Part shown: piece after piece, positions 2,367 to 58,058 of the stretch
How the letters are laid out: the number at the start of each line of letters is the position of its first letter
Position numbering within the stretch: the stretch's first letter is position 1
From: Lepidodermella squamata
Lineage: Eukaryota; Animalia; Gastrotricha
Reading direction: 5' to 3'
Length of the DNA: 64,000 bases
NCBI GenBank assembly: GCA_047495785.1
Contig: JBLDXI010000023.1
Span: 992,001-1,056,000, forward strand
Notes under the pieces: generated by a model
Database searches by the model: none
Seen by the model: only the letters and a program-made list of their open reading frames with translations
Told to the model about the DNA's origin: nothing
Translations under genes and position numbers: made by a program

Positions 2367-2402
<36 letters not shown>

Positions 2403-26548: not shown

Positions 26549-26659
26549 CGCCTGCCGCCCGGCCAGTTCCCTGTCCCACGATGTTAGTCTCTCTCCTCTC
26601 TCGCCTTCCGTCTTCCCTGAAGGAATCGAGAAACGACGCGCTAGGGCTTGATTTGCCTT

Positions 26660-27230
26660 CGATACAAATACAAACAACAATTTTAATTTCACTTTCGAAT
26701 TCGACAGGTTTACCCATAGCATAATCATTATAACGTCCAATCCTAAACCCGAAACAAGCGCTGTGTTGCGCAGCTCATGAACACAGGGTAGCAGAAATAT
26801 TCTGGCGGAGAACGGAGTAGAGAAGGAATAAAGAGAGATTAGGTCAAGAAGACAGGGAGCGGGCCCGACGACAGGCGGTTATAGAGGACGACTACTGGCG
26901 ACTTCACCGTTCACCGACTTTAAGCGGACGCCTTGGATTTGCTCGCGGAATGGCAGGACATGCCGGCAGGCATTCTCGGCGCAGCAGCTTAGATCCTGGG
27001 AGAACAACTGAGCAAGGCTAGGCGGGCGACAGCTCGAGTTCGGTGATGCGAAGGCGGTCTGTGAGACGAACGTTAAGCATCGCACGCATGCACTTGTTCT
27101 GGAGGACGTCGAGGCGGCGCAACTGTTGCTTTCCAGCGGACGAAAAGACGACGCAGCCGAAGGAGGCGATCGAGCGAACTAAAGCGAGATAGCTGGCACG
27201 GCGCCAGCAGAAGGAGCGGTTGATACGATA
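26660..27230 (-). mobile_element. 5'-truncated LINE fragment related to the element at 34-39 kb
   Basis: WRRASYLALVRS...KQQLRRLDVLQNKCMRAMLNVR aligns to WRRTLYLTLVRS...KQQLNRLAVIQNDSLRAMLHIR. It has a (TTTGTA)-like 3' tail. Confidence 0.8.
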
Positions 27231-34339: not shown

Positions 34340-37214
34340 CTAGCCTATGAAGTCGGGCAGAGGACCACGAGGAAGTCTGTTGCTCAACAGCACGAAGGGC
34401 GAGCGCGGAGGGGGGCGGGCCATCAGGCGGACGCTCTCGAGGTCCTCGCGCAGCGGCAGGACAAACTGAGCGGCTTTGGCGACATAACGGCGCTGGCACT
34501 TTTCCAGAAACCGAGGGACGCTCGGGATGCGGCAACGAGATTCCAACTCCGACACGCGGACCCTGTCGTCCCGACGAATGTGGAGCATTGCACGCAGGCT
34601 ATCATTTTGGATGACTGCGAGACGATTAAGCTGTTGCTTCGAGGCGGTAGCCAGACAAATGGTCCCATAAGACCAGCACGAACGGACCAGAGTCAAGTAA
34701 AGGGTGCGGCGCCAGCGGCGCGACAGCCCAGGGGTGAACATGAGATGTTTGAAAAAACCCAGATTTCTGCGGCAACGGTCAGAGACCTTGTCCACATGAA
34801 CTTTCCACGTCAGTTTAGGGTCCAAGTGAACACCGAGAACTCGTAACGACTCGACTTGCGGAATTACGGCTCCGTTGAGCCTAACAGCAACGGACGCGTT
34901 ACCAAAGGGCATAACTTCGCTCTTCGCGGGATTAAACTTCTGGCGCCATTTCTTGGCCCAGTCGGAAATACGAGTGAGCTCCAATTGGAGGCGACGCTGA
35001 GCAGCAGGGAACGTGCCACCCTCGCCGACGACAGTTAGATCGTCCGCGTAGGCCTGCAGCAACGTGCCACCCACGCTTGGGGCGGACAGCAAATCGGCGG
35101 TGTACAGAATGTAGAGAAGCGGCGACAACGGGGAACCCTGCGGCACCCCGCAATGGACGACGACTTGACGACTCAGCGAGCCCGCCACGCGAGCCTGCAG
35201 ACGACGGTCGCGAAGATAGTCGGCCAGCCAGCCGACCAAATTTCGCGGGAGAGGCAGCTGGGCCAGCTTATGGACCAGCCCGGCGTGCCACACGGAATCG
35301 TAGGCCGCCTGAACATCCAAGCCGGCCACGACAGTCTTCTTGCGCAGGGAGCGGTTGACGTGGACGCGATGAACGATGCGAAGTGGGACATCGGGCGCGG
35401 AATGGTGCGGACGGAATGCAAACTGATTCTCAGGGAGAAGGTGTTGACTTTCGAGAAACTGGGTCATCCACCGAGCCACGATCGACTCCAGGAGCTTGGC
35501 GTCAGTCGGCAGCAAGGAGATGGGACGCTGTGACGAGACATGGTTCTGCGGCTTGCCGGCCTTTGGGATAGGCACAACCAACCGCTTCTTTCCACGCTTG
35601 AGGCACGTAGCGACTGCCAAGAGACATGTTGAACAGCCGACGAAGGTGGGTTTGCAGGACAGGGCCACCCCACTTCATGTAGATGTTTTGAATACCATCC
35701 AAGCCAGGGGCCTTGAAGGACTTCAAACGGCTAACAGCATCAGCGAGCATCCGTTGACTGACAGAAAACTCGCCGAGAGCGGGCAAGCGGATCACATCGG
35801 AAGCCTGAAGGTCAGGATCTGCAACGACATCGTCCTCGACTTGTTGCCACCACTGGCGAATGGCAGCGTCCCCATCGGGGTCGACGTAGGGCGACATCGG
35901 TTTGACGAAATGATCAAGCAGTGCATCAGCAAGGGCAGTAGAAGGCGGCAGGACACTGCCATCATCGAGCTTCATGTAGGTCAGGCGATCAACAGGGGTA
36001 GGGCGAAACTTATCGAGACGACGGAGGCGGGCATAAGCCTCTCGGTAGCGGTGCTGGAACGACAGAGCTTCAACATACCGCAGGTTGGAGATATCCCGCC
36101 GCAATTGCTGAGCCGCTTTCGCAGCGCGGAACTGGGCGTCCAAGGCGTTGATCCTATCGACAAGCCCGGCATCAACTCGATTGCCGAGCCCACGTTCAAG
36201 AATCCTCTTTCTTTCGAGCAGGCTACGCATGTCGCGGGTCATTGAAACTTTTCTCAACTGAGTGCGGTCGAGCAGAGGGACGTGAACACGGCGAGATTCG
36301 GCGATTGCCGCACCAACCTGGCGCCGATACGAGTCGATCCGAATCACTGGGTCGCCGACATTAGGCAGCGGGATTTCGGACAGCAGCCGGATCAGGGTAC
36401 GAGAGAATCCAAAACGATCGGCTCTGGAGATGTCGTAGCGAGGAGCAGGGTCCACGAGGTCGTAGACGTGAGCAGGGCCAGAGCCGGACGGAAGACGAAC
36501 CCTGACAGACGTGCAGAAGTGATCGCTGCTAAGTCGGTCGCCAACAGACACGCCACCATCGAGAAGGCGAAGCGCCGCGTCGTTGACAATCCAGATATCG
36601 AGCGTAGACAGGGTCTTGTGAGCTTTCGACAGGTGCGTGGGAGGCGAGGAGAGAACAGTCAGACCGAGACGGGTGACGAAATGATGTACGGAATAGCCGT
36701 GAGGGTTCCATAAATCGTGGGACTGTGAACCCCACAGTGGAGACTTGCCATTGAGATCCCCGCTAAAGATACAGGGGAGGCCGGAGGCGGAGGCCCCAGC
36801 GAACTCGGTTTCCAGGAAGCTGAGATCCAAGGACGACGTCGGCGGACAATAGCCGGTAAGAAGACGAACAACAGACGAGCCAGCGAAAGGGACAGCATCC
36901 AAAGCGAGCCACTCACTAAGCTTGCGACCAGTCAGAGCCAGCCGCCGCTCGGCGACCACGAGAGCGCCCTCCCGAACAAACAGAGCAGCGCCGCCACGAG
37001 CGCCGTTGAGCAACAGATCCTCGGAGTCCTGTACCCGATCACAACGAAAAATTGCATAATCCCTAGAGGTTACACGCAAAAGAGAGAAAAGAAAGGATTC
37101 ACTTATGAAAAGAGCAAAGGGTTTATAAGTCTCTAGCTGTTGACAAGTTTCAGCTTCCTTGCCGGGGAGGCCGCACGGATTCCATTGTAGTAGCGTACGC
37201 AGCGTATTAGCCAT
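34340..37214 (-). CDS. LINE ORF2, AP endonuclease plus reverse transcriptase, one frameshift near 35578
   Basis: Starts MANTLRTLLQWN at 37214. APE motifs SES, GGAA, GDLN and SDH; RT motifs KAPGLDGI, RPISLL, QGSPLSP and YADD. One extra G breaks WKEAV|VVPIPK. Confidence 0.88.
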
Positions 37215-38781
37215 TACGGGTCGAGCTGGTTTGTGGCGGCAGCGGGGAGGCGAAGAGCCGGTCGAATAAGCGGCCGACAGTGTCGAGTCGGCGCTCGAAA
37301 GCGGCTTCCATACGCTGGAACCGCTCTTCCATAAGACTAAAGAGCCGGGCGCCATCAGGCGACAGAAAGTGACCGCGGAGTGCAGGATTAACAGGCGGAG
37401 CAGCAGGAGGCACCCACGACGGAGAAGGGGATGGCCACGGAGCAGGCGTTGGTCCGCCGACAAAGTCACGAGTGGAGAGAAAGTGCGTGGGGCCACCCCG
37501 CAGGTGCTCGGGGACCTTCGCTTGTTGACGACGCTTTTCACGTTCGGCGGCTTTCGCTTCACGGGCGACGGCGATGGCACGGCGACGGGCCACCTCGTCA
37601 GCCTGGGCGGTCTTGAACGCAGGGCAGCCCCGCCACGAACCAGAATGATGAGGCTCACCGCCGCCACTGCAGTGGGGGCAACGACGATCTTCAGGCTCAG
37701 CGAGACAGGTGGAAATCGTGTGATCAGTCGCAGCACAGCGGCTGCAGCGTTGCGTGGTGTCCGGAGAACAGTCGACAGCGACATGGCCGTAAGCGGCGCA
37801 CTTCAGACAGGTAGGCGGGAGAGCCTTGCTTTTCAACTTGTGGACTTTAATGCGACGATTCAGAAACTTGACACCGTTAGCCATGGCATCCTCGTAATGC
37901 TCAGCCGTTCGAAAGACGAGCACCATCGGCGACGTCTGCTTACCAGGAAGCGGGGGAATCTCGCGGATTTCCTCGATATACTCGGGCCGGAAAAGGGGGC
38001 GCAGAGTATCGCCAGTGTAACAGGAGGGCAGGCGGTAGCATATGGCCGAGCGTTTGTCTTTCAAAATGCGATCTGATTCGGTCACAGTCGGGTCAGGCCG
38101 GCCCGGATAGTGAATGCGGAAGTCTGAGTCGCGAAACGCACCCTTAGGGAAGCCGGCACGCTTGAGTAGCTTGTCAGCGTCCGTCGCAGTGGCGCACTTC
38201 ACGCGGAGGCCGCCGCTGCTCATGACATCGACAGCGACGGGCGCCAGCCATGGCGCAACGCGGACCAACTCTGGCTCGAGCTCTCCACGAGTCATGCCAG
38301 TGACGCGGTCGATTATCACGACCTTGTAGTTGACAGGCGCCTCTTGAGGTCCAATAGACGGGTGGGGAGCAGATGTACGAGTCGGGGGCGGCGGCGGCGG
38401 CGGGTCTTCCTTGCGCGCCACTTTACGCTTTGGCGACGCTTGCTGCCACGGCTGATTCGACGCCCCACTTGACGACGGGGGTGGGGAGGACGGTGGACTG
38501 TCAACAGACATCTGAAGGTCACCGAACGAAGACAGGTGAGGAGGGGACTGCCCAGTCGGCGGGCAGGGAGACGACGGAACGGTGTCAGCATTCTCCGAGC
38601 GTAACTGCTGGATTAGCTGCATGACGAGAGCAACTTGATCGACCGTAAGATCGTCGACCCGCAGCTTCTTCGCTCGCTCTTCGACAGTCATTCCAAATGG
38701 CTTCTTCGCTGGTGTAGCCATACTCCAGTAAACTTCCTCAAAGCTGTGGCGCGATGGGAAGCGTCGAGTAAATATTATCAA
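37207..38781 (-). CDS. LINE ORF1, gag-like with three zinc knuckles
   Basis: CLKCAAYGHVAVDC, CSRCAATDHTISTC and CPHC...HSGSWRGC. The true start may be the internal MATPAKK. Confidence 0.88.
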   Translation of the reverse strand: MIIFTRRFPSRHSFEEVYWSMATPAKKPFGMTVEERAKKLRVDDLTVDQVALVMQLIQQLRSENADTVPSSPCPPTGQSPPHLSSFGDLQMSVDSPPSSPPPSSSGASNQPWQQASPKRKVARKEDPPPPPPPTRTSAPHPSIGPQEAPVNYKVVIIDRVTGMTRGELEPELVRVAPWLAPVAVDVMSSGGLRVKCATATDADKLLKRAGFPKGAFRDSDFRIHYPGRPDPTVTESDRILKDKRSAICYRLPSCYTGDTLRPLFRPEYIEEIREIPPLPGKQTSPMVLVFRTAEHYEDAMANGVKFLNRRIKVHKLKSKALPPTCLKCAAYGHVAVDCSPDTTQRCSRCAATDHTISTCLAEPEDRRCPHCSGGGEPHHSGSWRGCPAFKTAQADEVARRRAIAVAREAKAAEREKRRQQAKVPEHLRGGPTHFLSTRDFVGGPTPAPWPSPSPSWVPPAAPPVNPALRGHFLSPDGARLFSLMEERFQRMEAAFERRLDTVGRLFDRLFASPLPPQTSSTRNG

Positions 38782-39699: not shown

Positions 39700-41428
39700 T
39701 TGGGGAGACCACGAGGTCAACGTGTGTCGCGCATTTGTTAAATTTCTACGAGTCACGGGCCGCAAAGCCACGAAATTCAATTTGCGCGTATATATCGAAT
39801 TTATCGACAGCATTTATCGCGCTCGATTGCCGGGTCGCTCTGCGACTTCCATCGTCGCCAAGGCTCGTTCTCTCCTTGAGGACGATTAAAAAACCTGGTG
39901 TTGAGTTGAGAAGGTGAACTACTGCGCGATTCTGAAAGAAATAAATTGACGACATTGGAAAACAATCGATTTTTTTATTCAAATTTCTGAACTTTTCAAA
40001 CCATCCTCACACAATCACACCTTGAAACTAGCGAAAAAGCTGTTCAAAATGCTGGCCGCCATGCGCAATGCATGATCGAACGCGCTCCTGCCAATTTCTC
40101 CGCACATTAGCCAGCGCTTCCTGCGTAACCTCTCCACAGGCGACTCGGATTCTTTCCTTCAGTTCATCCATACTGTCGATTCGCCCCCGATAAACTTTGT
40201 CTTTGAGGTGACCCCATAGGTAAAAATCGAGTGGCGTTAGATCCGGGGAACGAGGAGGCCACGGTACCGGACCTCCGCGCCCAACCCACCGGTGCGGAAA
40301 TCGTCGATCCAACCATTTGCGCACCTTGAGAGACCAGTGTGATGGGGCGCCGTCCTGCATAAACATGCTTCTAGGACCCACACGTTCTCGAATCAGCGGC
40401 CACAGCCATTGAACGAGCATCTTCAAATATTTCGCGCCATTAACACTGCCCTCGAAAAAATAGGGACCAATTATCGTGTCGCGAAATATTCCACACCAAA
40501 CGTCGACGCGTTCTGCACCCTGGTCTTGATTATCAATTATCTCATGTGGGTTGGATGTCGACCAGTGACGGAAGTTTTGCACGTCCACCTTACCACTTAA
40601 GCGAAATTTAGCCTCATCGCCAACCAGTATGTCCCACACGAAACCGATTTCAGATTCACATTGAGCGTCAAACCACGCCGAAAAATATAATCGCAGTTCG
40701 AAATCGGCGGGATTAAGTGATTGCACATGGCGCAATTTATAAGGGTGAAATCCAATTTTTTCAAAATTAATCTGATTCTTTCAGGGCTATAATTCAGCTC
40801 ACGACTGGCATCGCGAAGTGACTTGTTGGGATGTTGCGTAAAGTAATTGATAACCACATTTTCGACCTGATTCGTTGGAAGTTGATTTCTAGGCAAATCC
40901 GTCATCACCCCTAATGCAGAAAAAATAATTCCGATTAATCACCTGCGTGAGCTAAGTAATAAATTATTACCTGTGTTTACAAGGCGCGTGTAGTTTCTTT
41001 TAACCGTGTTAACAGATGGCTTCGGTCTAGTAGGATGTTTAGATCGAAATAATCGTGCCGCCAGACTCGCATTCTTTTTCTCGTGATATAGCAGCGCCAT
41101 TTCCGCGCGTTCGACAGGTGAGTAGTAAGAACCAGGCATTTTTTTTCAGAGAAAATTTTGCACTGACAGATGTGACTAACGACAATTATTCGTGCACCTG
41201 TTAAATTGTTTCGCATTCGTTGGGGCTCAACATGACCTAGGTCGCGGCGGCACTGTTAATTATTACGCGCTCAATCACTGCCAAGTTTTTTTACATGTAA
41301 ACATGTCTAATCTGATTCTACAGGATATCGACATCGGGCTGTGCAAGTACTCGCTATACAAACGTAATGCAGTACTACACGCAAATATTGCTAAGAAAGA
41401 TTATTGCCACTATAAAAAAGTCACCCTG
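39700..41428 (-). mobile_element. DD41D Tc1/mariner DNA transposon
   Basis: TIR-like end TA-CAGGGTGACTTTTTT at 41428 (minus strand), abutting a MITE half. The other TIR was not found, so the left boundary is approximate. Confidence 0.7.
40028..41139 (-). CDS. Tc1/mariner transposase, DD41D type, one intron and one frameshift
   Basis: HTH exon 41139-40971 and a 60-nt GT-AG intron at 40970-40911. Frameshift in an A run near 40755. Catalytic GDEAKF, QDGAPSH and SPDLTPLD, with 41 residues between the last two Asp. Confidence 0.85.
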
Positions 41429-41783: not shown

Positions 41784-44700
41784 TCAAGATGGACTATTCC
41801 ATCCTGGCCAGCTCCGGAGATTTGGGCTGGACCTTAGCAGCATTCCAACCGTACTTCTGACACCAGTTGTGGTTGTCGCAGTTGTGGTTGTCGCAGTGGT
41901 AGTCGTCAAATACAACGGCATCGGTTTAGCCGTAACAGCTCCAGCGGCTCTTAGCGCGGCTATAGCCCGAGTATTGCCGTATATCAACGCTAAATCAAGC
42001 GGAGCATAGCCTTCGTCATTCAGCGCATTAATATTAGCTCCAGCTTGAATCAACTCGCCAACATTTTTAGTGGTTTCTCGAGCTGAGAGTTTATGTAGTA
42101 CAGTATCTCCCCTGCGGAGTTTTCGATTGATATCGTACCCTTTTTGAACTAGAAACCTGGCAAAACCGTTGAACTCGTAGTATTTCCAAATAAGGGTCAG
42201 ACACGTGTCGTCGTTTTTGTTCTGAGAATTCACGTCCACTCCAGTGAAATTTGCAAATCGTCTGGCCCGCGTGAGAGACATGTCGTCATTCTTACAAGTC
42301 AACAAAAAGGCGTTATTCCCATCATTGTCAACAGCCGATACATCTGCACCATTATGGACGAGAATATCGACCACATTTTCCGAGGTTACACTAGCTGCAA
42401 TCATTAACGGAGTTTTACCAGTTGATTCTCGTTCTTCTAGGTCGATGCCGGCAGTTTTGATCAGTAATCTCGCCAGATCAACGTCATCATCACGTGCAGC
42501 AAGATGTAGCAATGTATAATTTGTGTAGTGGTATTCGGTTGAATTAATCCTGATTGTAACATCGGCCCCATTTGATATCAGATATTCATAGGCTTGAGCG
42601 CGATCTGACGACTTCAAGTACATGGCTGCGACTACAAGTGGGGTCCTGCCTTCGGTATCCTTGTCAGAAACAGAATTTCCAGCCTCCTCAATAGCGAATT
42701 TTACTACTGGGAGAGCAGGCATCTTGGAGATCCGACAGGCCTCCAAAAGGATTTGATCTACGTGTTTAGAAGCTCCCTGTGAAATCAGGAATTTAACGAT
42801 CTCAAGGTTCGTTGCCGTCGCGTCGAGAATCGCCGTTCTCCCGTTCGCTTCCAAATCGGCATCTGCACCGAATTGCACGAGTAATTCAACCAGATCAAGG
42901 CGATTTTGTTCAGCTGCGAGCATTAAAGCAGATTTCTTGAACTCTGGATGAATCGCATTCGCATCGCCATAATTTTCGAGTAGAATCTGAAGCATTTCCA
43001 ACGAAGCATTAGCAACACTTAAAGCAGCAATCACCATTGGGATCGGTTGGTCGTAAATTAAGGTCTCACAACCTACGTAATCGTCGTGCTGTTCAATTAT
43101 GAGATCGTCCCCGCGGGCTTGATTGAGTCGAATCATTTCGCGAACAGCAGTGATGTTCCCAGCTTTGACATGTCCTGCAAATCTCTGAAGATGCATAATA
43201 ATTAGGCCAAATAATTATTTTCAGTCCTACGCTAATAAAGGTGGAAAGGGCTGGTTGATGGTACTAAACGCTCTACTACGGTGGATCTCTGGTTAACTGC
43301 TCGAAATGGTTGAAATCAGTGTTCGCAGTTGGGTCCTCGAGTTAGGGGGTGTCCCGTTGCAACTTTTGCCCCATTTGTAGACAAACTGGTTCCCCTCGTC
43401 GATAAAGTCAACTTTGAATTTTAACCCACCGAGATAAGCGATTCATTCCGCACAGCTTTAACGACTGATCGAGTAGTAATGCTGGTCTTCATTGCAGCAG
43501 TTGATCTTGCCTTGAAAATAGCTCCAACAATGGGCTGCAGTCCATCATTTATTGCCTCGTCGCTGGGCGTCAATGGCCACATTTTAGCGGAAGTTATTGC
43601 TGCTGGTGTCGTCGAAATTGTGGATGAACCCCAAAATGTTGGTGGCGGACCGATGCGCCAGTTCGATGATCTCATGGCTAACTCACTGCCCAAGGCAGCA
43701 CCCCGTCTTCTCAAATTGCCGATGCTGAGTTCATCTTTCCACATTGTCGCGATGTCCAAGGCAGTTTCGCCCCGGTCATTTGTTGCATTGACATCAACAC
43801 CCAGATCGAGCAAGGCCGCAAGAGTATGCTCCCGATTATTGGACGCTGCTGCGGACATGAGAGCGGTATAGCCCGCATCTTTAGCCCGAATGTTGAAATC
43901 GTAGCCTTTACTGGCTAAGTACTGCATAATTTCAACAAGATCCCAGTCGTTGACCTGCGAACCACTTCTCATTTGGAGGCGATAGTCGCAGGCAGAAAAA
44001 TCAGACCTTGAATTGACGTCATTCTGTCCGATTTCGATTGCAAACTTGATAAATGCTAAATGACCCAACTCAGTACGATCAATCTGACAAGCTTGCAGCA
44101 ACATATTACCCCCTTCGTAATTTCTCGCCTGCGCATCGGCTCCTTGGTCGATCAAGTATTGAAGTAAATCGATGGAATACCCCGTCCTAGCCGCGATCAG
44201 CAAAGGCGTGTTGTCTTCCTTGTCTTTCGCATTGACATCCATTTTGAATTGTTCCACGAGTAATTTAGCGAAAGGCACGGGATCACTAGTGTAAACCCGA
44301 CAAAGAATATGTAGGGCAGTTTGTCCAAGCCAGTTTCTGGAATCAGGCGATTCGAATGGCAGCAAGTAGTAAGCTAACCGAAGATATTCTTGAGTGACTG
44401 GGCCGTCAAAGGCAACCATCAACGCCGTTCTGTTCTCCTGGTCTCGAACATCCGTCCTTGCTGCGTAATTTTCAACTAGCAGTCTCGCTAGGTCAAGCCG
44501 GCCACCTCTTGCTGCCCAGAGAAACGGAGTTTTTGAATCAGCGCTAACATCCATGCGCTCCACAACATTTTTACCGATTCGATACTCGGAGTAGCCATAA
44601 CTCCTAGCCTCAACATTGGCGCCATTTCGTAGTAGTAATTCGACCATTTCGTAGCTCTGATTTGTTCGAATTGCATTCACTAAAGCCGGGGCTCGGTTTC

Positions 44701-44932
44701 TTGGTCGGTAAACTGCCGTGGAATTTGCGTTAGCAAGGCCCGAATTTAACATTTGCCGAACGGTTGAAATTTGGCCTGACATAACAGCTTGGTTGAAAGC
44801 CTAAATGAACCACTTAAAACCTGAAGAAGCTATACACGTTCAAGCTCTTACGCTGTCGTAATCGATCGCCCTTGCGTAAATGATCGCAACCGCGGAACAT
44901 ATTTCGAACAAAATTACGTAAAGGGATATCAT
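41784..44932 (-). CDS. Secreted ankyrin-repeat protein, copy 6 (3 exons, 950 aa)
   Basis: Exons 44932-44852 (MISLYVILFEICSAVAIIYARAIDYDS), 44800-43430 and 43184-41784. Ends RSWPGWNSPS. Confidence 0.9.
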
Positions 44933-45533: not shown

Positions 45534-46871
45534 TCATTGCATGTAGGACGGAAGTCCAACAACAGGCGCGAAACCCCAGCGAGCATTTCCGACATCGAAC
45601 ACGTTGTAGTAGCGCTGGATGACTGGCTTGCCCAGAACAATTTGGGTCAGAGTGTTAGCATAAATGCCGAAAACACCGCCGTATCCTCCACCAAGAGGGC
45701 AGAAACCACTATGCCAAGACAGCTCGGCGAGGCCCAGGTAAACAGCCGGCGGGACAGTCACACTTCCGCCATTGAAATCGAAGGTGAAGCTAGGAAGAGA
45801 GGCGAGATTGGTCCCGCAAGGCCAGCCCCAGTTCGAAGAGTTGAAGTACGTGGCGGTGTCTTGGCAAGACGGCAGAGTGCACTGTTGAGTGGCTCCGAGA
45901 GCCTTGGCGACAGTCACAGCCATTTCAACTGTTGGGAAGTTGATAGCACCCGTGGTACCAGTATCAGGCAGAACAGAACAGGATCCGTCCTGGCATGCGA
46001 CAGCTTTACCATTTACCTTAAGAAATCCATATGAAAATGGTAGTCTGAAGTTGGAATAGAACCTACCGAGATCTTGTTCAGTGAAACAAACCACTTTGTA
46101 TTTGACAGGCCGTAGGGGGTTACTGGGCTGTAGACCAGCGAACCAGTGAACTGAGAGTTATCAATGGTTCCGATGTTCAAACCTCCCACGGTTGCGTTTG
46201 AGGCAGCTGTGAGATAGATTGTCCAAATAGGGAGGTTTCCTCCAGCAACCGCCGTTGTGATTAGGTTCGGCAGAATGCAAGAAGGGTAGTTCTTCGCGCA
46301 TGGCTGCGTGTAGTTCTGCCAGCCCATTCCGATTACACCACTGTGGCCACTCGGAGGACTGCCACTGGTGAGTGCAGTTGTGATAGCCATGACTGTCGAC
46401 GCGACTTTGAAGTTTCCCAAAGCAACAGCGTCACTGCCGTACGAGCATTGAAGGGAGGCACTTCCATAGGTGAGTTGACCTGCTGGAATCGAGCTGGACA
46501 GATCTTTCCATGTGGAGGATTTTGCATAATCGAATCCTGTAATCCCAGTTGTCAAGGATTGAGCGAACTGTGCGCTAGCGACCTGGAATGACTTTGAGCC
46601 GGAATCGACCATCGTTGGTAAAGTCTGTCCTGGGGTTCCAAAGGTGACCATCACATTGTAGGGCGAGAATTTCTGTTCGCGAAATAGCTTGCTTAAATGA
46701 ATTCAAAGATTTACTACTTACATTCCAGCCAATGCTAGTAACAGGGGCCGTGTATATTACGGCATGTGCTTTCAAAAACAGAAAATAATTTTTTTTTAAT
46801 GAGTTAGATCAACTATACTTACCCTGCTGCATGGCAGCTGCAAGAAGTAAAGCTACGAAAGAGGCTGGCAT
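45534..46871 (-). CDS. Secreted pepsin-family (A1) aspartic protease, 4 exons, 394 aa
   Basis: Exons 46871-46823, 46768-46722, 46672-46067 and 46016-45534. Signal MPASFVALLLAAAMQQAHA; catalytic DSGS and DTGT; flap LTYGS; GVIGMG; IVLG...YYNVFD...RWGFA. Confidence 0.88.
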
Positions 46872-47363: not shown

Positions 47364-47840
47364 TCACGAAGAAATCATTGCAATGAAGTAGAGATTAATT
47401 CCCATAACAACACTGACACTTGTGAGTAGTACTACAAAGTCCAAGGCTCGAATCAGAGAGATTGCACTTATTTTCTTGAACAGCTCAACTTGCAGCGAAT
47501 ACAACTTCGGATTCTGAGTCATAGTTGCTGTCGCAATGACCTCATACATGGCAAGTACAGCAAATCGCAGGCCGATTAGGAGCAGCTGGTTCCATAAATA
47601 AAGACCCGAAGCCAAGAACAAGTAAGATATAGCAAGGGATCATGAAATTCACTATATAATAGCCCGGGTCCTGTTGAACTTCAAAGTAACTCGGGGATAG
47701 GACACAGTTGAAGAGGCGATCGAACTTGATGCAGTAGTACCTCTCGCGCTGGTCAACCCTTGGTAGCACCAAACTCCGTGGTCCAACGGCCCCTTGACCC
47801 TAGCGTAGAGCCCTCCAATTGAGAGAAAGCTAACATGCTG
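47364..47840 (-). pseudogene. Frameshifted 3' fragment of a Cys-loop channel paralogue
   Basis: HVSFLSIGGLYARVKGPLDHGVW, PGYYIVNFMIPCYILL and M4-like IRALDFVVLL match the 49215 channel. Frameshifts; much of M2-M3 is deleted. Confidence 0.8.
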
Positions 47841-47879
47841 TGTAAAGTGTAAAGCCCGTTACATGTTACATTATTTTCG

Positions 47880-48964
47880 AAGTGCTTGAAGGTTGACAGA
47901 ATAGGAGTGACCTCCGCGAACTCAGCTCTGAGCTACGTCGTGGCTCAGCCACCTAGTTTTGCAAGCCCGTTTGAGCTTTCGACCGTTGGTTCCTAAGAGT
48001 CTGCTTTCGGCTTACTTTCCGCGAAGATCTTCCGCAGCCTGAGCAACAGTTTTGCCAGCTTTTCAAGTAGCTGAGCTCTGTTATCGAATCGGCAGTTGCA
48101 AGTGCTTATCTGTGTGGGCAACACGATGAATAAGCCAAGCCACTAGCTGCCGAAGACGTGCTCAAGACCTCCAATGTCACCAGCCATATTATTGGTTTCG
48201 TCAGCACCGAGTCCGTTTAAAACCGTGAGAAACGTTTCGAGCAAGGAGGCGCAGTCAGTCGTTGACGCCATTCGAATGCCAAGAAAAGGAGTGACTGATA
48301 ACAATGACCATAAAATTATTCGCGTGCATTGTAAATAATATACATTGTGTGCATGAAAATTGGGTTAAAGCTTTTTGATGAAAGCCAGTTCATCAATTCG
48401 AAAGAGAGGCTCCGTTCGAAAGAGCTAAATCTGTTTTCTTGAGACATCGCCCATTGTTGTGCGATCAACGGTTGGCGAGTAATGGTTACAAACCCATTTT
48501 TTTAAGGCAGCTGACAACAAAGATTTTCCCACACATGATAAGACGTTCGAAATGTCAGATTTTTTCCATTCAGATGGCATTGCTTTAAAAAGGTAGGTTT
48601 GTAGCCACGTTACTTGCCAACCGTTGATCGCGCGAAAATGTCTCAAAAACACTGGCGAGAGTTTTTTATGCAAGATCCTTTTCTCTCAATCAGAGCGTCT
48701 GAAACGCTTGGACGCGCCTTGAATTAGCTGCAGAACTCAAGAACACTGTGTTTTCACGATGGTTGTGACCGCAGCTGACCCAAAGCCGTCCGAAGCATCG
48801 ACAAAAACGTCATCTTCATCAGTATGAAGCGCTTGGAAGTCACCGGCTAACGCGCTATCACTATGCTTTGGCGTTTTTGGTCTGATATTCCGCTGTCTCT
48901 TTTTTCCTCTAAGCCTAGGATAAGAATCTGACATTCTCAAAAAGTATAAACTTGAATGGCGCAA
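47880..48964 (-). mobile_element. Degenerate hAT-like transposase remnant
   Basis: Fragmented peptides (...TDCASLLETFLTVLNGLGADETNNMAG...) resemble hAT/ZMYM-type transposases. It truncates the channel pseudogene. Confidence 0.4.
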
Positions 48965-49214
48965 ACAACTGTTTTAATGCCCTTAAACTTAAACTATAAG
49001 AAAAAGATGAGAAAAATTATTGTTTAAAACATTATATAATAATTGTGATCAATGAAAACGCAAAAGAAATCATTGTCAGAAGATGAAAAATCTTGTGCTT
49101 CTATAAAAATAAGTTACAAAATGTTTTTAATGGGGTGTAAACACTGAAATTTTGCTAATCGGGCACAAGTTGATCGGAATCACTTCAGACTTGTTCATCC
49201 AATTCTAGCTGTTG

Positions 49215-52200
49215 TTAGATCCCAGCGGATAGAATAAAGTTGAAATTGATGGCCAATATTGCGAATGTAGCCGACAAAAAAGCCAAAATATCGTAAGCCC
49301 GAATCAAAGGCAAAGCTTGAAGAGGTTTCATAAGTTTCACTGGTAACGAATATTTGTCCTCATGACGAGTCATGACGGCGGATGCGACAATTTGATACAT
49401 CGCTACCGCTGCTACTGTAGCTGTAAGGCTAAGCACGTAGTTTGCAAACAGAATCTGCTGATCAGTCTCAGGCACGCTTCGCAAGACATCGGATTGAGCG
49501 ACAACCAGCGACAACATGATTGTGCAACAAATTGCGGGACGATCAGGGACATCTGGAGCCATCAACATTGTACCGAGCGCGAGGCACAGCAGAATAAAAC
49601 AAGGAATCAGGAAGTTGACAATGTAGTAGCCCGGGTTGCGTTCGAATTTCAGCTTGAGTTTAACGTAAGAAGACATTTGAGAAAACAACGGAATGGTGCC
49701 GCGTTCTATAGTGTAGCCCTTGAAATTCCAAACGCCAAAGTCGAGTTTACCAGCTATTTTGACATACATGCCGCCTATCGAAAGAGTATTAATATGTTCC
49801 TCGCTTTGTAACACGAGTTCGCAGGTTTGATGGTCGAATGGAAATGTCGTGAGGTCAATGTCGCAGCTAGTCGCGAAAGTTCCTACGCGAGTCCAATGGA
49901 AAAATAGCGTTCTATTCGGCCGAGTTGGGTAGTAAGCGATATCAATCTTCTCCCCGCATGCTGGATTAGTGATGTCGAAATCTGGCGTTTTGTTAGGGAA
50001 AATCATCGAGGGTCGCCATATATCAGTTCGCCGGGTTGAGACAAGTCGCTCCTTATCCTCGGCCTCCGGGGCCGTGTAGCTCGCGTCGCAAGAAGATACC
50101 ATCCACTGTAGGAGTAGAGAACCCCAAAAGTAGGCTCTTTGTTGATTTTGCTCGATAGATTCGACGTTTTCCAAGGTTAGCTGAATGTAAATCTGAGTTG
50201 CTGCGCCAGGGGCACGCTGCTCTACGTTAAGATGCGGACAGGGAAGTAGGTCATCAATTTTAACCGTCTGGGGGAAATTTCCGAGGAGCAGCTGTGAACC
50301 GGGAAGGTAGTTATTGGGTCGTAATAGGACTCGTTTTGCCCGGGCGTTGATGATGGTGATGTTGGTGATAGTGGCGATCGTGTTTCTGAGGGTGTTGGGA
50401 ATGGCGATGGTGATGATTGTAATTGTGTTCGTGATGTTGAAGGTAACGGTGAGGTTGATGTCGGCGCTGGCGTTGAAGTTACTGTTAATGTTGGTGTTGG
50501 TGTATGTGTTGAAGTCGAAGTCGAAGTTGAAGTCGAAGTTGAAGTTGATGTTGATGATGACGGTGACGGTGATGGTAATGGTAATGTTGTTGTATCGATC
50601 ACTGTCTCGTTAAAAGTGGACAAGACCCAGACAATCCTAGAATAATGCGGGGTTTAGAACAAGTCATTGTTATTGTAATGATGCGTCCAGTATGCGGCTA
50701 TCAGGAGGGGGAGGGGGTGGGGGGGGATCGTCCCTCCCAGCTCGGCTGGTCCAGAAAACAAAATGAGGATTTATCTTCTTTAATTTTGAGAGGTTCTGTA
50801 GCGTCGTCGGTGAAAGATCCCTGAAATCTGCAACGTTGAAGACGACAGTGAATCTGCTGCGCTATATGTCCTTATTTATGTTTTGCTTGTTTGCTTTACG
50901 AGGGGTCGGAGCATGAAGGAAGTTATATAGTATAAACCTACGCTCGTCGGATGGTGACGGTGCCTTTAAGAGCAGCGACCTCAAGCATTACATTCCCCTG
51001 AGGATACGGTAAATTGTCGAAGCACATTGCGGACGGGGTCGATCCGTAACCAGGCAATGCCGTAATAGCCACCTGGAATACAATTGAGAGGCAATGAACG
51101 CAATATGCAAATGGAAAACACACCGAAGCTGTGTAATTGCGCTTTTGCAAAATGAGCCGATACTTTGCATTGCCGCTCGAATTGAACAGCCCCGAGAGAC
51201 CACATGATGGGGGTGTCACGTTGAAGTTGTTGAACGGCACTGGGGTCAAAGTGGTGACCCTAACACTGTTGAATGCAGCGTATAATTCCCCGCTACCGTT
51301 CGCGAGTCGCTGCGAAATCGTCAGGCCTGAATATAAGTTCATGGCGTTGTTTATCGTCCCGTTAGTTGATCCTTTCGAATGAATTCAGCGACATGAAAAG
51401 CGTGGTTTCATACCGGAATATCTTACCTATTTGTGAAAACTGAGATTGTCTCGTGTATCCCATGACAAACCAGTATTCCGAGCCGTTTGTAGGATAACTT
51501 ATATCCATGTCAAATTCGATCCGCCAGGACCACGCCTCATGAGTTGGGCCGAAGTCCTATCATTGGCGTTAATTATATTAGTCGAGAGGCCATTTGACCG
51601 TTAACAAGTAGGATTGGGCTTACAGTGCCCGAAGTAGGATTCTCGAACTGGGGGGTATTTTCGGGCCCCAATTTTATGACCAAAGGGTCTCCCCTGTGGT
51701 ATTTTGGGGGTTTTTCCACTTTGGCCTGCCGAACTCGGGGGTACACGATACCCCTCATTCCCCCTGTACTTCGCGCCCTGTTGGTTTATTTTCTGTATTT
51801 TACCAGTATTTTTGTATTATTAGGGTTGCTAGATTTTCTTAGTCAGTTTATCCAGAGGATGTCAAATTTTCAAAATTCAGCAGATCCCAGGAAGAAGTCC
51901 ATCCACCTCAGACGACGGGATTATCGATTTCGTTTGACGTAATTATCCACTCTGTTTTTGACGTCCTTGGATTCCTCGTTTATTTATCCTGGAAGTGGCA
52001 TCAAAATCTCATGATGCATGATGCCCAAAATCTCGCCAAACTCCACTTTTCCCTTGTTAACAGCCATTTTACTTCAAAATTTGAGCTCGTTTTGAATGTT
52101 CAAATTAGAAGTCCTAATTTTACCAAACAATCTACATAGGATCACACTTTCAAATTTATATATTTATAAACCTGGCGACTGTCTTCCGACAAAATCCCTT

Positions 52201-53666
52201 AGGCCCCAGAATTTCGCACTCGCCCTCCCTCAACTCCAACTCCCACGTATGTTGTTAACACCGTTAACACCGTATGTTGTTATGACGTGTGCTTCATTCT
52301 TTAGTAAACTCACAGCTATAACTGTAGCCCGATTTGACGATGGACTGAGCGAACAGCCACTCAAGTTCACGCAAGCTGAGGCCGCCCATCGAGGAATTCC
52401 AACCGATGTGCTTTGATTGAACCCATCAAAGCTATTCACAAGATGCAATGTAGGTGTACCGGATAGATCTGGCGGAAAGGGCAACGTGGAGGTATCGGGC
52501 TCAGGAGCGTAGGCGGCGCGGGTATTCCAGAAATACCTAAGGAAAATCAACATTAGGAATTAAGAATAGATCCAAATATTAACGAGTTAAATTGTTACAG
52601 TTTCTTGATAAGAATATCGGCGTTGGTTCCCATTCCGATGAAAAATGGGCCTAAGGTAGCTTGGTTCATCATAAAGCCGGGTAAACTGTAGACGCCAGCG
52701 TTGTCGGCCATCGGGATGCAAGTGGACGCATTTCCCGCAAGTGGAACGATCGACAGCTGAGCGAAAGATTATTTTCGCACACATTTTTTGCACATGAGAA
52801 AGCAGCTTACACTATGGACATTAGTCGATTTTAGAGCTTGAAGTACGATTCGGTAGGTCATGTTGCCCGAACTCGTGAGAATCGCATTGCTACCACAGCT
52901 GGGCTGAGACTCGTTAAAGTCTGTCGCATTCATCATTGGCGGGCGAAATGTTTCATTAGCAGCTGCCGTTCTACGAGAATCCGAAAAACTCGCATATATC
53001 TTGCCACCAGGTTCGAGCTTGTGCCAATTTATGTTACCAGCCGCGCTGCTGTTGAAGGAATCGAGAAACAGTGCGCTAGGGCTTGATTTTACTGGGATAA
53101 AAGCAAATGTCGATGTAACATGCAAATTCGAGAAGTTTACCTGGTATATAATCAGTAAGACGTCCGATTCCGAACCCGAACCAAGCATCCGATTGCGCCG
53201 TGTTGTAGCTTACGGACAGCTCGATTTCAATCCTGAATGGCGACACAACTCCATGGGCATCTGTTATCAACTAATTTTGAGTATTAAATTTGTTCCTGTT
53301 TTTCGATTTTATTTTAACTCACACTTGCGCTTGCAGTGCCGAATGTTTTGTTTGGGGAAGTTTGAGAAGAAATTAGCCGGATTCCATTACTCGCGAATTC
53401 AGCTGAGTAGCTAAGCGTTAAGCTTGTATTGCCGTTGATATTGAGGTTTTCGCGGTCGAATGACAAGCCAGGAATATAGCGCGGTCTCCCTGCTAAAGTA
53501 TCTTCAAATGGCACTGATGTTGTGTCTGGCAGCGGGTCATATCCCGATCGAACCACTCCTATGTTGAAAAATCGATAAAATATGTCATTCAAATTTATGA
53601 GTTAGTCAAACCTGGTAATGCGAACAAAATTAGACTCGTTAAAGTAAATTTCGGAATTACGAACAT
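49215..53666 (-). CDS. Multi-domain Cys-loop ligand-gated ion channel: signal peptide, two duplicated beta-rich domains, S/T/P mucin stalk, LBD and M1-M4 (about 1004 aa if the 1-nt frameshift near 50270 is corrected)
   Basis: Exons 53666-53612, 53558-53323, 53270-53141, 53091-52811, 52756-52599, 52536-52314, 51556-51427, 51371-51124, 51072-50942 and 50636-49215, all GT-AG and phase-compatible. Cys-loop CDIDLTTFPFDHQTC, loop A IWRP, RNPGYY-M1 and four TM helices. Confidence 0.72.
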
Positions 53667-55679: not shown

Positions 55680-58058
55680 ATGAGCACGAATAGCTTATCT
55701 GCCCTTCTATCACTGTTGATTCTGCAATCTGCGTTCGGACAAAATAGAACGCGAATGAAATTCCTCTTGCTGTCACCAGTTATTGGCATGGACCCGAAAA
55801 ACATTCAAACAGCCGCCATAACCATGCGATACGTCATCGATCGCGTCAACCAGCGGCAAGACATTCTGCGCGATTATCTGATCGAACTTGACCATCGTGA
55901 CGACTTCTTCTCCTTACAATCCGCTCAGCGCTTAATTGAATTCCGCCGAAACTGGACAGAAAGTTCGAGTTTCATTCAATCACCGATAATTGCTGGGCCT
56001 TTGATTTCAAACGGCTGTAAGGCTATGGGGAAATTGCTACCTTATGTCAATTCTATCGCAATAAGCACTCAATGTACGGCGCCATTCCTGAGTAACCACA
56101 GCGAATATCCGAATTTGTTCCTATCGCTAACAACCTCGAAAACTAACGCCTTAGCTATGCTGTTCTATATGAGAAATGAGGGTAAATGGAACCGGTTTGC
56201 ACTAGTAACAACATTATCAATAGCAAATGACGTCGCATTGGCTTATTTCATGCATGACCGAGCTGTTGCTGGTGGATTTGAAGTTCCCTACTTCAACATG
56301 TTCACCGAACCCGGCCCTGAGGCTGTTCAACCCCTGAAAGCCTCTGGACTGAGAATTATCGTGGTTACTGTGGGTGCAGCGCCTACTTTCAATCGATTTC
56401 TATGCGAGGCGTTCAAAGCAGGTCTGACTGGGCCTAGATATGTTTTCATAGGTCTATCAACCGCTTTTTCCTTGAGTATCCCTAATGGATGTAGTCGGGA
56501 TGAGTTCCTCAACCAATTGAGGCAAACACTCTTCTTCGGATATGCTACAAAGCCTGAGGATCCACATCGAATCTCGAGCCTGGGAAACTCCAGGCTTGAA
56601 TTTGATGCTATGATGAGCCGATTGACTAATCTAACTTCAGAAGACTATTTTCTGGCTTTAGTTCTTCATGACACCTTAGTCACCTCAATGTTGGCGCTGA
56701 ACAGAACTGACTGGAAGCTGAAAGCTGATTTTAATATGTCTCTGAGGGATTATCATCGATTCCCTGATATCGTGACCAAAGTTGCGTATAATGCGATTTT
56801 AGAGACTAAATCAGTCGGAATACGAGTTGGAATGACTTCATACAGCAAAGCTGGTCAATTGCTAGGCGATATTCAGGTAGCATCACAGTGGTCCCTTCAA
56901 AACGGCCTGACAGATCTAGCTTGGGTGACCGATTATTCTAACGCATCTTCAAGTGAATCAAATATGTCTTCGTTCAGTTTGAAAATTACTGGTAAAACAG
57001 CTTGGATTTCTGATTCCGTCCCAAGAGACAGGCCTATCTTGATTCGAGAAACAATGACTGTTAAATCGTCATCCTCGGTTATAGCTTGGATTTTGATAAC
57101 TTGTACGTCTTTGGTTCAGCTCATGACCATTGTCGCGATTATTGTTGGCAAGCCTATGATAGTCGAATTTCAAGCGACGAAACTTTTCGGCTTATCCGGA
57201 TGTCTATTTTTGAACGCAGCATCCTCAGCTTTTACTATGGACCGGATTTCAGGTGGAATCAGCCCTAGCTGTCGTGAATCTTTTCCTTCTCGGATGTGGC
57301 GTTGTAGCCACTTTCACGCCAGTTTCACTCCGCCTTTTAGTGATTAATCGATTCGTTCAACAATCAGTTCAGAAAGGCTTCAGAAAGTCCGACGCGAGAT
57401 TCAGCTCTACTGCTGCTACTAGAATTTCAAATGTGAAATCAGACGCTAATGGTACCAAAACAAAGCTATTGATAGCTTTTCCGTCGAACATCTGGCGAGT
57501 TTTTGATACTCAAATTGTTGCGTGATTCTTCTCATCAGCCTATCGATTTTAGTGGCATGGGTGATCATCATTCAAGATATGACATGCACAGAAACCTTAC
57601 TAATCGAGCATTCTTACAATGAAAAGATTGACACAGTTAAGGAAGCCTGGGCGGTTACATGTGGAATGAGTAACAGGTCATCAGTTATCAGCTGGTCACT
57701 TTTTGGATCCATATTCTGCGTTCAATTTCTGCTAATATTGGCTAGTTTGTTGGCAGCTTTCCAACTCAGGCAAATGAGAGGTTTCTCAAATGAGTGCCAC
57801 GAATTTCTGCCAACTTGCCTGGGAGCTATCGCTAGTGCAGCTCTACTTCCTGCAGGCTTCTTGATCGCGGTTGTGCTAAATAGCGATCCAATGAACCAGC
57901 AAATAGCTTTGGCTTATGTCACCGTTATTATTTCAGCGATAATTTCTATTCCGTGGATTTATCCGAACTTCTTGAAAAAAGGTGGCCAATCGATAGCAAG
58001 TAGCATCAGTTCTTCGAATTTGATGCATAATCCTGCGAGAGCGTCCGGGTTGGTTTGA
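55680..58058 (+). CDS. Intronless class C (GABA-B-like) GPCR with two frameshifts (near 57270 and 57521); pseudogene or sequence errors
   Basis: Signal peptide and Venus-flytrap domain (VNQRQDILRDYLIEL, YPNLF, WNRFALV, LCEAFKAGLTGPRYVFI), no Cys-rich domain. Seven hydrophobic helices are spread over ORFs 55680-57347, 57253-57525 and 57522-58058. Confidence 0.8.

What the first reader, a model, noticed from the sequence alone, without database searches (positions are those of the whole stretch)
49215..53666. Cys-loop ion channel fused to two tandem lectin-like domains through a mucin stalk
Seen: small ORF fragments assemble into a signal exon (MFVIPKFTLTSLILFALPGVVRS) and two homologous domains of about 250 aa. 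Matching segments: YDPLPDTTSVPF / YAPEPDTSTLPF; FRIEIELSVSY / WRIEFDMDISY; PSCGSNAILTSSGNMTYRIVLQ / PSCGLSGLFNSSGNAKYRLILQ. Both domains have identical intron phases 0-1-0-2 and equal 130-nt exons. The last donor (IRRA, 50942) matches the acceptor at 50636 just as IKKL|YFW does in domain 1. It leads into a roughly 100-aa S/T/P stalk and, after one 1-nt shift, a complete intronless LBD plus M1-M4 that has no signal peptide of its own. Established: animal Cys-loop subunits normally start directly with the LBD; extra N-terminal domains are known mainly from prokaryotic channels (e.g. DeCLIC) and Cys-less invertebrate channels. Inference: a tethered or glycan/surface-sensing pentameric channel formed by capture of a channel exon. 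The lectin fold is a guess from beta-strand patterns.
Basis: partly seen in the sequence, partly recalled or inferred. Interest (0 to 1): 0.88.

Follow-up and report, generated by a model that had tools for sequence, protein, structure and literature searches.

The report
Ion channel with stalked outer domains
An animal gene joins two unclassified sugar-coated outer domains and a mucin-like stalk to a nicotinic-type ion channel, a layout reported so far only in bacteria, but in this sequence a one-base frame break separates the stalk from the channel.

Summary
On the minus strand, ten canonical GT-AG exons (53666-50222) give a 668-aa ORF. It has a signal peptide, two homologous domains of about 250 aa (31% identity, E 2e-21, same intron phases, both with a 130-nt exon) and an 84-aa core that is 82% S/T/P. 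A stop-free, intronless Cys-loop channel (50291-49218) follows in another frame. It has no ATG before beta2 and no signal peptide. AlphaFold gives pLDDT 93, and the best PDB match is the alpha7 nAChR.

The fusion reading is supported by relatives. The channel nests in a clade of metagenomic animal channels. Single uninterrupted ORFs there encode signal peptide, outer domain, T/S-rich stalk and channel. Their outer domains include a C-type lectin and ConA-like Laminin_G_3.

- The stalk-plus-channel is the conserved module and the outer domains vary, so this is not a one-off exon capture.
- The frame break fits best at 50298-50283, not at the C5 run.
- The window's two domains match nothing, so their lectin fold is untested.

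Whether the break is an assembly error, a recent null mutation or bypassed by splicing needs reads or cDNA. The held literature says N-terminal domains are not seen in eukaryotic members of this channel family.

The parts
53612..53666 (-). Exon 1: ATG plus a hydrophobic signal peptide. It ends in phase 1 at a GT donor.
52599..53558 (-). Outer domain 1 (269 aa). Exons e2 53558-53323, e3 53270-53141, e4 53091-52811, e5 52756-52599. Introns are 52, 49 and 54 nt. It has 8 N-glycosylation sequons and 2 Cys.
   Evidence: No Pfam or PDB match.
50942..52536 (-). Outer domain 2 (244 aa). Exons e6 52536-52314, e7 51556-51427, e8 51371-51124, e9 51072-50942. Introns are 757, 55 and 51 nt. Phases match domain 1. 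It has 8 sequons and 4 Cys.
50222..50636 (-). Exon 10 read in the stalk frame. The acceptor is at 50637/50636 (phase 2). It opens with IVW..DTTTLPL, which echoes the start of each domain, then an 84-aa core that is 82% S/T/P, then ..YYDPITTFPV.., and ends at TAG 50224-50222.
   Evidence: Second codon position is C in 77% of codons in this frame.
50270..50298 (-). Zone where the reading frame must change from the stalk frame to the channel frame (net one base short). A profile of 7 relatives scores best with the break at 50298-50283.
49215..50291 (-). Intronless Cys-loop channel in the second frame, 358 aa plus TAA. It has a pre-LBD linker with a conserved Cys, the LBD with a Cys-loop (C143-C157, about 49865-49821), M1-M4 (about 49634-49227) and a short M3-M4 loop.
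49126..49131 (-). ATTAAA poly(A) signal 84 nt after the channel stop. There is no AATAAA or ATTAAA between 50784 and here, so none follows the stalk-frame stop.
47382..47852 (-). Decayed paralogous channel fragment on the same strand (pre-M1, M1, start of M2, M3 end and M4, spread over several frames with stops and a deletion).
26618..26759 (-). 142-nt relic, 70% identical to the e3-end / intron 3 / e4-start of domain 1, lying inside the ankyrin array.

Best explanation
This is one transcription unit of a lineage-specific clade of animal Cys-loop channels. Each subunit has a signal peptide, extracellular N-terminal module(s), an O-glycosylated S/T/P stalk, a short conserved linker with a Cys, and then a compact nAChR-like LBD with M1-M4.

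Here the N-terminal part is a tandem pair of heavily N-glycosylated domains of about 250 aa and unknown fold. Each is split by three phase-conserved introns. The stalk and channel lie in one exon.

Inferred mechanism: a pentamer would hold ten outer modules on flexible stalks of roughly 30 nm above a probably cation-selective pore (-1' Asp, 9' Leu). The modules would bind an extracellular macromolecule such as a glycan, matrix or a surface. They would then either anchor or concentrate the channel, or bias gating through the N-terminal helix.

In the sequence as given, the stalk frame and the channel frame are one base out of register at about 50298-50270. I judge it roughly even whether this is an assembly error, a heterozygous allele or a very recent null mutation. 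If it is real, only a 668-aa secreted glycoprotein would be made from the canonical splice form.
For: Shown:
- The exon model is fully canonical and in frame.
- The two domains are homologous.
- The channel is a confident pLGIC: Pfam, PDB alpha7 E 1.3e-13, AF2 pLDDT 93 and pTM 0.85, Foldseek E 3.5e-20.
- The channel frame has no ATG before 50102 and no signal peptide.
- No poly(A) signal lies between the stalk stop and the channel end.
- The 358 channel codons are stop-free and keep the family's near-invariant residues.
- The channel sits in a 97% SH-aLRT clade that holds all 12 relatives carrying outer domains.
- Relatives P0006, P0012, P0025, P0031, P0033, P0036, P0151, L008 and L010 have outer domain and/or stalk and channel in one uninterrupted frame. 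Their outer domains include Lectin_C, Laminin_G_3 and EGF.
- The window's stalk-frame '..ESYYDPITTFPV' parallels P0003/L008 '..SEYIIDPLTGFPI' right after its stalk. The channel-frame 'GNFPQTVKIDDLLPC' parallels 'GNAVPLVKISDILQC'.

Inferred: pentamer, ion selectivity, the binding role of the outer modules, and stalk length.
Against: - The two frames are not continuous in the sequence.
- The best-fitting break site has no homopolymer.
- The rest of the window shows no other frame breaks: 12 ankyrin ORFs are intact and the pepsin-like gene is normally spliced. That argues against a sloppy assembly.
- A decayed channel paralogue lies 1.4 kb away, so gene death does occur here.
- The frame-0 match upstream of the break is only marginally significant: 4.5 bits over an all-channel-frame reading, and no excess over shuffles across 18 relatives.
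- The window's two domains have no detectable relatives anywhere, so no orthologue confirms this exact fusion.
Confidence: 0.62

Rival explanations
1. The frames are joined by splicing, not by a missing base. One route is an alternative acceptor for intron 9 that enters the channel frame (first exon base 50601, 50481, 50466 or 50385). Another is an extra 191-nt intron inside exon 10 (GTAACT at 50482 to the AG at 50293-50292). Another joins exon 1 to an acceptor at 50329, giving signal peptide plus channel only. The 668-aa stalked secreted protein and a channel isoform would then be two products of one gene.
For: All these AG/GT sites exist in the right phase classes (and my reading). The acceptors at 50385 and 50291 have 11 of 15 pyrimidines, as good as the gene's confirmed-looking acceptors. 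The channel frame is open from 50627.
Against: - An S/T/P-coding region is automatically open in the channel frame, because NAC, NTC and NCC codons cannot be stops. Openness is therefore not evidence.
- In that frame the linker would be N/I/F/T-rich with an almost invariant third codon position, unlike any relative.
- S/T/P codon periodicity continues to about 50330, so the proposed 191-nt intron looks coding.
- More than 10 relatives have stalk and channel contiguous with no intron.
- One AG in three falls in any given phase class by chance.
Confidence: 0.15
2. These are two independent genes: a secreted two-domain mucin-like glycoprotein that ends at 50222, and a separate channel gene with its own promoter and 5' exon.
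For: The 668-aa ORF is complete with its own stop.
Against: - No ATG or signal peptide exists in the channel frame before beta2.
- Only 0-70 nt lie between the stalk stop and the conserved pre-LBD linker, which overlaps the stalk ORF.
- No poly(A) signal follows the stalk stop.
- Relatives have the fused layout.
Confidence: 0.06
3. The locus is a dead gene, and the apparent architecture is a relic without function.
For: There is a frame break at a site without a homopolymer. There is a decayed paralogue at 47382-47852 and a domain-1 relic at 26618-26759.
Against: - Only one lesion is seen in about 3.1 kb of coding sequence.
- All 18 splice sites are intact.
- The 358 channel codons are stop-free with invariant family residues kept and fold at pLDDT 93.
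- Any inactivation must therefore be very recent.
Confidence: 0.17

Closest known systems
Unnamed metagenomic animal channels (ENA assemblies): P0151 (812 aa), L006, P0003/L008, P0005/L010, P0004, P0006, P0012, P0025, P0031, P0033, P0036
   Same: - Same channel clade (97% SH-aLRT), 30-44% identity.
- Same pre-LBD linker with a conserved Cys, and a second family-specific Cys after beta2.
- Short M3-M4 loop.
- N-terminal signal peptide, outer domain and T/S-rich stalk ahead of the LBD.
- The two closest by identity (P0151, L006) also carry two tandem outer domains.
   Different: - Their outer domains are of other kinds (C-type lectin, Laminin_G_3, EGF, unclassified). None shows sequence similarity to the window's domains.
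- Their genes are mostly intronless and in one frame.
- The window's outer domains are split by introns, and its stalk and channel are out of frame.
DeCLIC and other prokaryotic pLGICs with N-terminal domains (PMC9897478, PMC12664993)
   Same: A pentameric channel subunit preceded by two tandem N-terminal lobes. In DeCLIC these are jelly-roll lobes that influence gating kinetics.
   Different: - DeCLIC is bacterial, has a Pro-loop rather than a Cys-loop, and its lobes pack directly on the ECD with no mucin stalk.
- There is no sequence similarity to solved structures for the window's domain pieces.
[quoted passage not shown]
Animal nicotinic-type Cys-loop receptors (alpha7 nAChR, best PDB match)
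   Same: LBD beta-sandwich, Cys-loop with FPFD, pre-M1 Arg, M2 9' Leu, M2-M3 Pro, four TM helices.
   Different: - Only about 19-22% identity.
- No loop-C vicinal cysteines, and the loop-B Trp is not aligned, so it is probably not ACh-gated.
- The intracellular loop is very short.
- An extra conserved Cys pair is present.
- It has a large N-terminal extension instead of starting at the LBD.
Ionotropic glutamate receptors (AMPA/NMDA) with amino-terminal domains
   Same: Ligand-gated channels in which a separate N-terminal extracellular domain sits above the ligand-binding domain and can bind ligands or modulate gating allosterically (as noted in PMC9897478).
   Different: The fold and stoichiometry are unrelated (tetramers). 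There is no mucin stalk. This is an analogy only.

Membership tests
Pentameric ligand-gated (Cys-loop) channel superfamily | Extracellular ligand-binding beta-sandwich matching Pfam PF02931 above its gathering score | tested here: met
   37.4 bits against a cutoff of 26, E 2.3e-9; alpha7 nAChR E 1.3e-13.
Pentameric ligand-gated (Cys-loop) channel superfamily | Cys-loop: two cysteines 13 residues apart enclosing F/Y-P-F/Y-D | tested here: met
   C143 and C157 of the channel enclose ..TTFPFDHQT... Both Cys, the Pro and the Asp are (nearly) invariant in the 62-sequence alignment.
Pentameric ligand-gated (Cys-loop) channel superfamily | Four transmembrane helices with pre-M1 Arg, M2 9' Leu and M2-M3 Pro | tested here: met
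   Hydropathy and DSSP give helices 220-241, 250-272, 281-309 and 329-355. R218, L260 and P274 are invariant.
Pentameric ligand-gated (Cys-loop) channel superfamily | Overall fold like solved pLGIC subunits | tested here: met
   AF2 pLDDT 93, pTM 0.85. Foldseek PDB top hits are alpha7 nAChR, GlyR and ELIC, E about 1e-19 to 1e-20, TM 0.7-0.8.
Pentameric ligand-gated (Cys-loop) channel superfamily | Translatable as a secreted membrane protein (start codon, signal peptide, continuous frame) | tested here: not met
   The channel frame has no ATG before 50102 and no signal peptide. The signal peptide is in exon 1, but the stalk frame stops at 50222, one base out of register with the channel.
Pentameric ligand-gated (Cys-loop) channel superfamily | Pentameric assembly and ligand-gated conductance | not testable with these tools
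   Needs expression and electrophysiology.
Acetylcholine-gated nicotinic receptors | Loop-C vicinal Cys pair and the aromatic box (loop-B Trp) | tested here: not met
   In the alignment to alpha7 the loop-C region is shorter with no CC, and the loop-B GSWSYGG region aligns to ..EEHINTLSIGG.. without a Trp.
Clade of animal pLGICs carrying outer domains (metagenomic relatives) | Channel groups with the members that carry outer domains | tested here: met
   a 24-row clade at 97% SH-aLRT contains all 12 such rows. A 6-row subclade at 97% contains P0001/P0151, P0006, P0004, P0003 and P0005.
Clade of animal pLGICs carrying outer domains (metagenomic relatives) | Conserved pre-LBD linker with Cys, plus a second Cys after beta2 | tested here: met
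   C18 and C68 are at least 90% conserved. A linker profile matches the channel frame from 50282 at 31.4 bits.
Clade of animal pLGICs carrying outer domains (metagenomic relatives) | S/T-rich stalk and outer domain in the same uninterrupted frame as the channel | tested here: inconclusive
   The stalk (82% S/T/P) and outer domains lie directly upstream, but in another frame. Relatives are continuous.
Lectins (ConA-like/Laminin G, L-type, C-type) | Sequence match of the window's two domains to a lectin family | tested here: not met
   No Pfam family at E<=1 for any exon ORF. PDB sequence and profile searches found no lectin: the only row was a 0.29 hit to a viral attachment glycoprotein, taken as chance. 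No similarity to the relatives' Laminin_G_3 or other outer domains.
Lectins (ConA-like/Laminin G, L-type, C-type) | Lectin fold of the domains | not tested
   A spliced domain has no contiguous reference, so it could not be given to structure prediction. The latter failed (pLDDT 33).
DeCLIC-type N-terminal domains | Homology of the outer lobes to the DeCLIC NTD | tested here: not met
   PDB searches with pieces of the domains did not find DeCLIC or any pLGIC entry. The resemblance is architectural only.

The most novel reading that the evidence does not exclude
A whole clade of animal Cys-loop channels works as ionotropic surface or glycan sensors. Interchangeable lectin-type modules (C-type lectin, ConA-like, and the new two-domain module seen here) are held on mucin stalks and directly tether or gate a cation pore. 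This would be an ion-channel counterpart of pattern-recognition or adhesion receptors. At this locus the stalk region may in addition be read in two frames through alternative splicing, giving a secreted and a channel-bound form.
Probability: 0.25. Interest if true: 0.9.

Novelty: new variant of a known kind. Interest (0 to 1): 0.72.

Why it matters
Structural papers on this channel family state that N-terminal accessory domains are confined to prokaryotic members (PMC9897478). Here the window's gene and more than ten relatives show animal Cys-loop channels with such domains. They have signal peptide, lectin-type or other extracellular modules, a mucin stalk and then the channel.

If these channels are expressed, they offer a eukaryotic model for how accessory domains modulate pentameric channels. 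They also suggest a way to convert binding of a glycan or surface directly into an ionic signal. The family also shows domain shuffling at the 5' end of a channel gene.

For this particular locus, the frame break means function must first be shown.

Tried and rejected
- **Word-based protein searches.** The channel, the e4/e8 profile and the neighbouring ANF_receptor ORF all came back blank. The organism could not be named.
- **Exact look-ups.** A window ankyrin ORF and the neighbours of the relatives gave no named records.
- **JGI metagenome scan** with the e4/e8 profile: 57 pattern matches, none confirmed.
- **Pfam on all exon ORFs** and **PDB sequence/profile searches** with domain pieces: nothing usable.
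- **Comparison of domains 1 and 2 with every relative's outer domain** by phmmer, blastp and hhalign: no signal, no better than a reversed-sequence control.
- **AlphaFold of the closest relative's outer domain** (P0151:1-448, 7-row alignment): pLDDT 33, unusable, so no fold search was done.
- **Long bivalve hits as N-terminally extended channels:** rejected. They are tandem channel-channel gene models.
- **A short intron spanning the break:** rejected. The only GT..AG pair near it is 39 nt and keeps the frame, and GTTCACAG is 8 nt.
- **Rfam and tRNA scans** of the window: empty.
- **Structure prediction or Pfam on the spliced domains:** left out, because no contiguous reference exists for them.
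Full report
**What is in the sequence**

The window is eukaryotic and gene-dense, with introns of about 50 nt. On the minus strand between 53666 and 50222, ten exons with canonical GT-AG borders join into a 668-aa ORF.

- Exon 1 (53666-53612) encodes a Met and a hydrophobic signal peptide.
- Exons 2-5 and 6-9 encode two domains of 269 and 244 aa. They align at 31% identity over 251 columns (blastp E 2e-21).
- The domains share intron phases 0-1-0-2, and each has a 130-nt second exon.
- Each domain has 8 N-glycosylation sequons and a conserved Cys pair.
- The phase-2 donor at 50942 fits the acceptor at 50636, just as the domain 1 to domain 2 junction does.
- Exon 10 opens like the start of a third repeat (IVW..DTTTLPL). 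It then becomes an 84-aa core that is 82% S/T/P and ends at TAG 50224-50222.

**The channel**

In a second frame, open from 50627 to 49218, lies an intronless 358-aa Cys-loop subunit. The evidence for this is consistent across methods:

- Pfam Neur_chan_LBD at 37.4 bits.
- Best solved relatives are the alpha7, alpha4, alpha6 and beta2 nAChRs (E 1e-13).
- It has a Cys-loop with FPFD, pre-M1 Arg, 9' Leu, M2-M3 Pro and four helices.
- An AlphaFold model built on 62 relatives has pLDDT 93 and pTM 0.85. It matches alpha7 nAChR, GlyR and ELIC at E about 1e-20.
- The pore has -2' Pro, -1' Asp, 0' Arg. This is a mixed signature that I read as probably cation-selective.
- Loop C lacks the vicinal cysteines and the loop-B Trp is absent, so ACh is an unlikely agonist.
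- The frame has no ATG before 50102 (inside beta2) and no signal peptide.
- The only poly(A) signal after exon 9 is ATTAAA at 49131, 84 nt past the channel stop.

The channel therefore cannot be an independent gene in any obvious way.

**Relatives**

The word-based search found nothing. The exhaustive HMMER search found 2,400 relatives, the best at only 35-44% identity. The nearest are all unnamed proteins from ENA metagenome assemblies. They sit on compact animal contigs whose neighbours include CUB-trypsin, LDLa, fn3 and EGF genes.

Many of them carry, in one uninterrupted ORF, a signal peptide, an N-terminal domain, a T/S-rich stalk and the channel. These are P0006, P0012, P0025, P0031, P0033 and P0036.

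- For P0003 and P0005, the called ORF merely starts at an internal Met. On the contigs the same frame runs upstream through at least 130 residues of T-rich stalk.
- In L010 that frame (1297-3282) also contains a Pfam C-type lectin domain (29 bits against a cutoff of 22.6).
- Others have Laminin_G_3, which belongs to the ConA-like lectin/glucanase superfamily. P0036 scores 6e-16, with weaker hits in P0033, P0031, P0029 and P0025. P0012 has an EGF domain.
- The two closest by identity (P0151 and L006) carry two tandem outer domains that are homologous to each other across species.

A maximum-likelihood tree puts the window's channel inside a 97%-supported clade that holds every relative with an outer domain. 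Long bivalve hits are tandem channel-channel models, not extensions.

The conserved module is therefore stalk plus linker plus channel, and the outer domain is what varies. The layout 'lectin on a mucin stalk on a Cys-loop channel' is real in this clade. 'Capture of a channel exon' is better described as exchange of the 5' module.

**The frame break**

Three lines of evidence place the frames on either side of the break:

- The stalk frame is the evolved coding frame up to about 50330. Second codon positions are C in 77% of codons and third positions vary. The other frame is open there only because NAC, NTC and NCC codons cannot be stops.
- The channel frame matches the relatives' linker profile from 50282 onward (31.4 bits).
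- I placed an unknown base at each position and scored each reading against a profile of the seven closest relatives. The maximum is 47.5 bits at 50298-50283. It is 43.0 bits if everything is read in the channel frame, and about 41 bits at the C5 run 50274-50270.

With the break in the 14-nt stretch 50294-50281, the spacing FPV-5 residues-GN..P.VKI..LL.C equals that of P0151 without gaps. The stalk-frame ..ESYYDPITTFPV also parallels ..SEYIIDPLTGFPI, which follows the stalk of P0003/L008.

These differences amount to only 4-6 bits, and the upstream match is not significant across all 18 relatives. The C5 run therefore cannot be excluded. I found no other frame breaks in the window: 12 ankyrin ORFs are intact and the pepsin-like gene is normally spliced. 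A decayed channel paralogue lies 1.4 kb downstream.

I therefore rate an assembly or allelic artefact and a very recent real lesion as about equally likely. Any real lesion must be young. The 358 channel codons are stop-free and keep all family-invariant residues.

**Splicing routes that would also join the frames**

Several sites exist in the right phase:

- Acceptors at 50601, 50481, 50466 or 50385 for the exon 9 donor.
- A 191-nt intron from 50482 to 50292 inside exon 10.
- An exon 1 to 50329 junction, giving a plain signal-peptide-plus-channel subunit.

They cannot be tested without RNA. I rank them below the one-base explanation for two reasons. The relatives are contiguous at this point, and the sequence that would be removed or re-framed looks like S/T/P coding sequence.

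**The two outer domains**

They match nothing:

- Pfam.
- PDB by sequence or profile.
- The word-indexed protein collection, within its length limits.
- A JGI metagenome scan.
- The outer domains of any relative, by phmmer, blastp or hhalign.

By eye, the order of motifs resembles a ConA-like or L-type lectin sandwich. That is my reading, not a test. A spliced domain has no contiguous reference, so I did not submit it for structure prediction. The attempt on the closest relative's outer domain failed (pLDDT 33). The lectin fold of these domains remains unverified. The lectin theme is established only for relatives.

**Comparison with what is known**

The nearest described analogue is DeCLIC, a bacterial pLGIC with two jelly-roll N-terminal lobes that affect gating. 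The paper describing its dynamics states that such domains are not observed in any eukaryotic homologue (PMC9897478). Jaiteh et al. 2016 deliberately trimmed terminal regions and called for architecture surveys (PMC4795631). No paper in the held library contains both 'pentameric ligand-gated ion channel' and 'C-type lectin domain'.

This is therefore a new variant of a known kind: an animal Cys-loop channel clade with accessory N-terminal modules on mucin stalks. The window contributes a new two-domain module to that clade.

**Verdict**

The architecture holds. The exon-capture origin, the exact break site and the lectin fold are not supported, or not yet.
- Interest is 0.72. It is high at the family level. 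It is lowered for this locus by the unresolved frame break, the unknown fold and the lack of an orthologue.

Noticed in passing
window 2296-31508 and 41784-44782 (minus strand): A tandem array of six units, five of them spaced about 6 kb apart and the sixth (41784-44782) lying beyond the transposon insertions at 34-41 kb. Each unit has two intact intronless ankyrin-repeat ORFs of 416-491 aa (Pfam Ank_2 E down to 1e-44).
   Followed up: partly
window 34340-38781 (minus strand): A GC-rich (56-59%) non-LTR retrotransposon with endonuclease (Exo_endo_phos_2) and RVT_1 ORFs in overlapping frames. A DDE_3 (Tc1/mariner-type) transposase ORF lies at 40028-40735.
   Followed up: partly
window 47382-47852 (minus strand): A decayed paralogue of the channel (pre-M1, M1, start of M2, M3 end and M4) spread over several frames with stops and a deletion. 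It is 63% identical over M1-M2 and shows local birth and death of channel genes.
   Followed up: partly
window 26618-26759: A 142-nt relic, 70% identical to the exon 3 / intron 3 / exon 4 junction of outer domain 1, embedded in the ankyrin array. It points to a former second copy of the domain gene.
   Followed up: partly
window 45534-46654 (minus strand): A pepsin-like aspartyl protease gene (Pfam Asp E 4.5e-21) with a normal intron of about 60 nt between two ORFs.
   Followed up: partly
window 55680-57347 (plus strand): A 555-aa intronless ORF with an ANF_receptor ligand-binding region (E 1.9e-19). The word-based search found no homologue at E<=1e-5, so the genome is far from anything in that collection.
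   Followed up: partly
L010:1297-3282 (ENA ERZ27332993 k141_1026815): One uninterrupted 662-aa ORF encodes a C-type lectin domain, a T-rich stalk of about 130 aa and a Cys-loop channel. This is the clearest lectin-stalk-channel example among the relatives.
   Followed up: yes
channel residues 18 and 68 (window about 50240-50238 and 50090-50088): Two extra cysteines are conserved in at least 90% of the clade. One is in the pre-LBD helix (..LLPC..) and one follows beta2 (..W.V..C..). They may form a clade-specific disulfide fixing the N-terminal linker to the LBD.
   Followed up: no
window 48452-48509 / 48581-48640: An inverted repeat of about 60 nt (82% identity) lies between the channel gene and its decayed paralogue. 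It may be a small transposon remnant.
   Followed up: no
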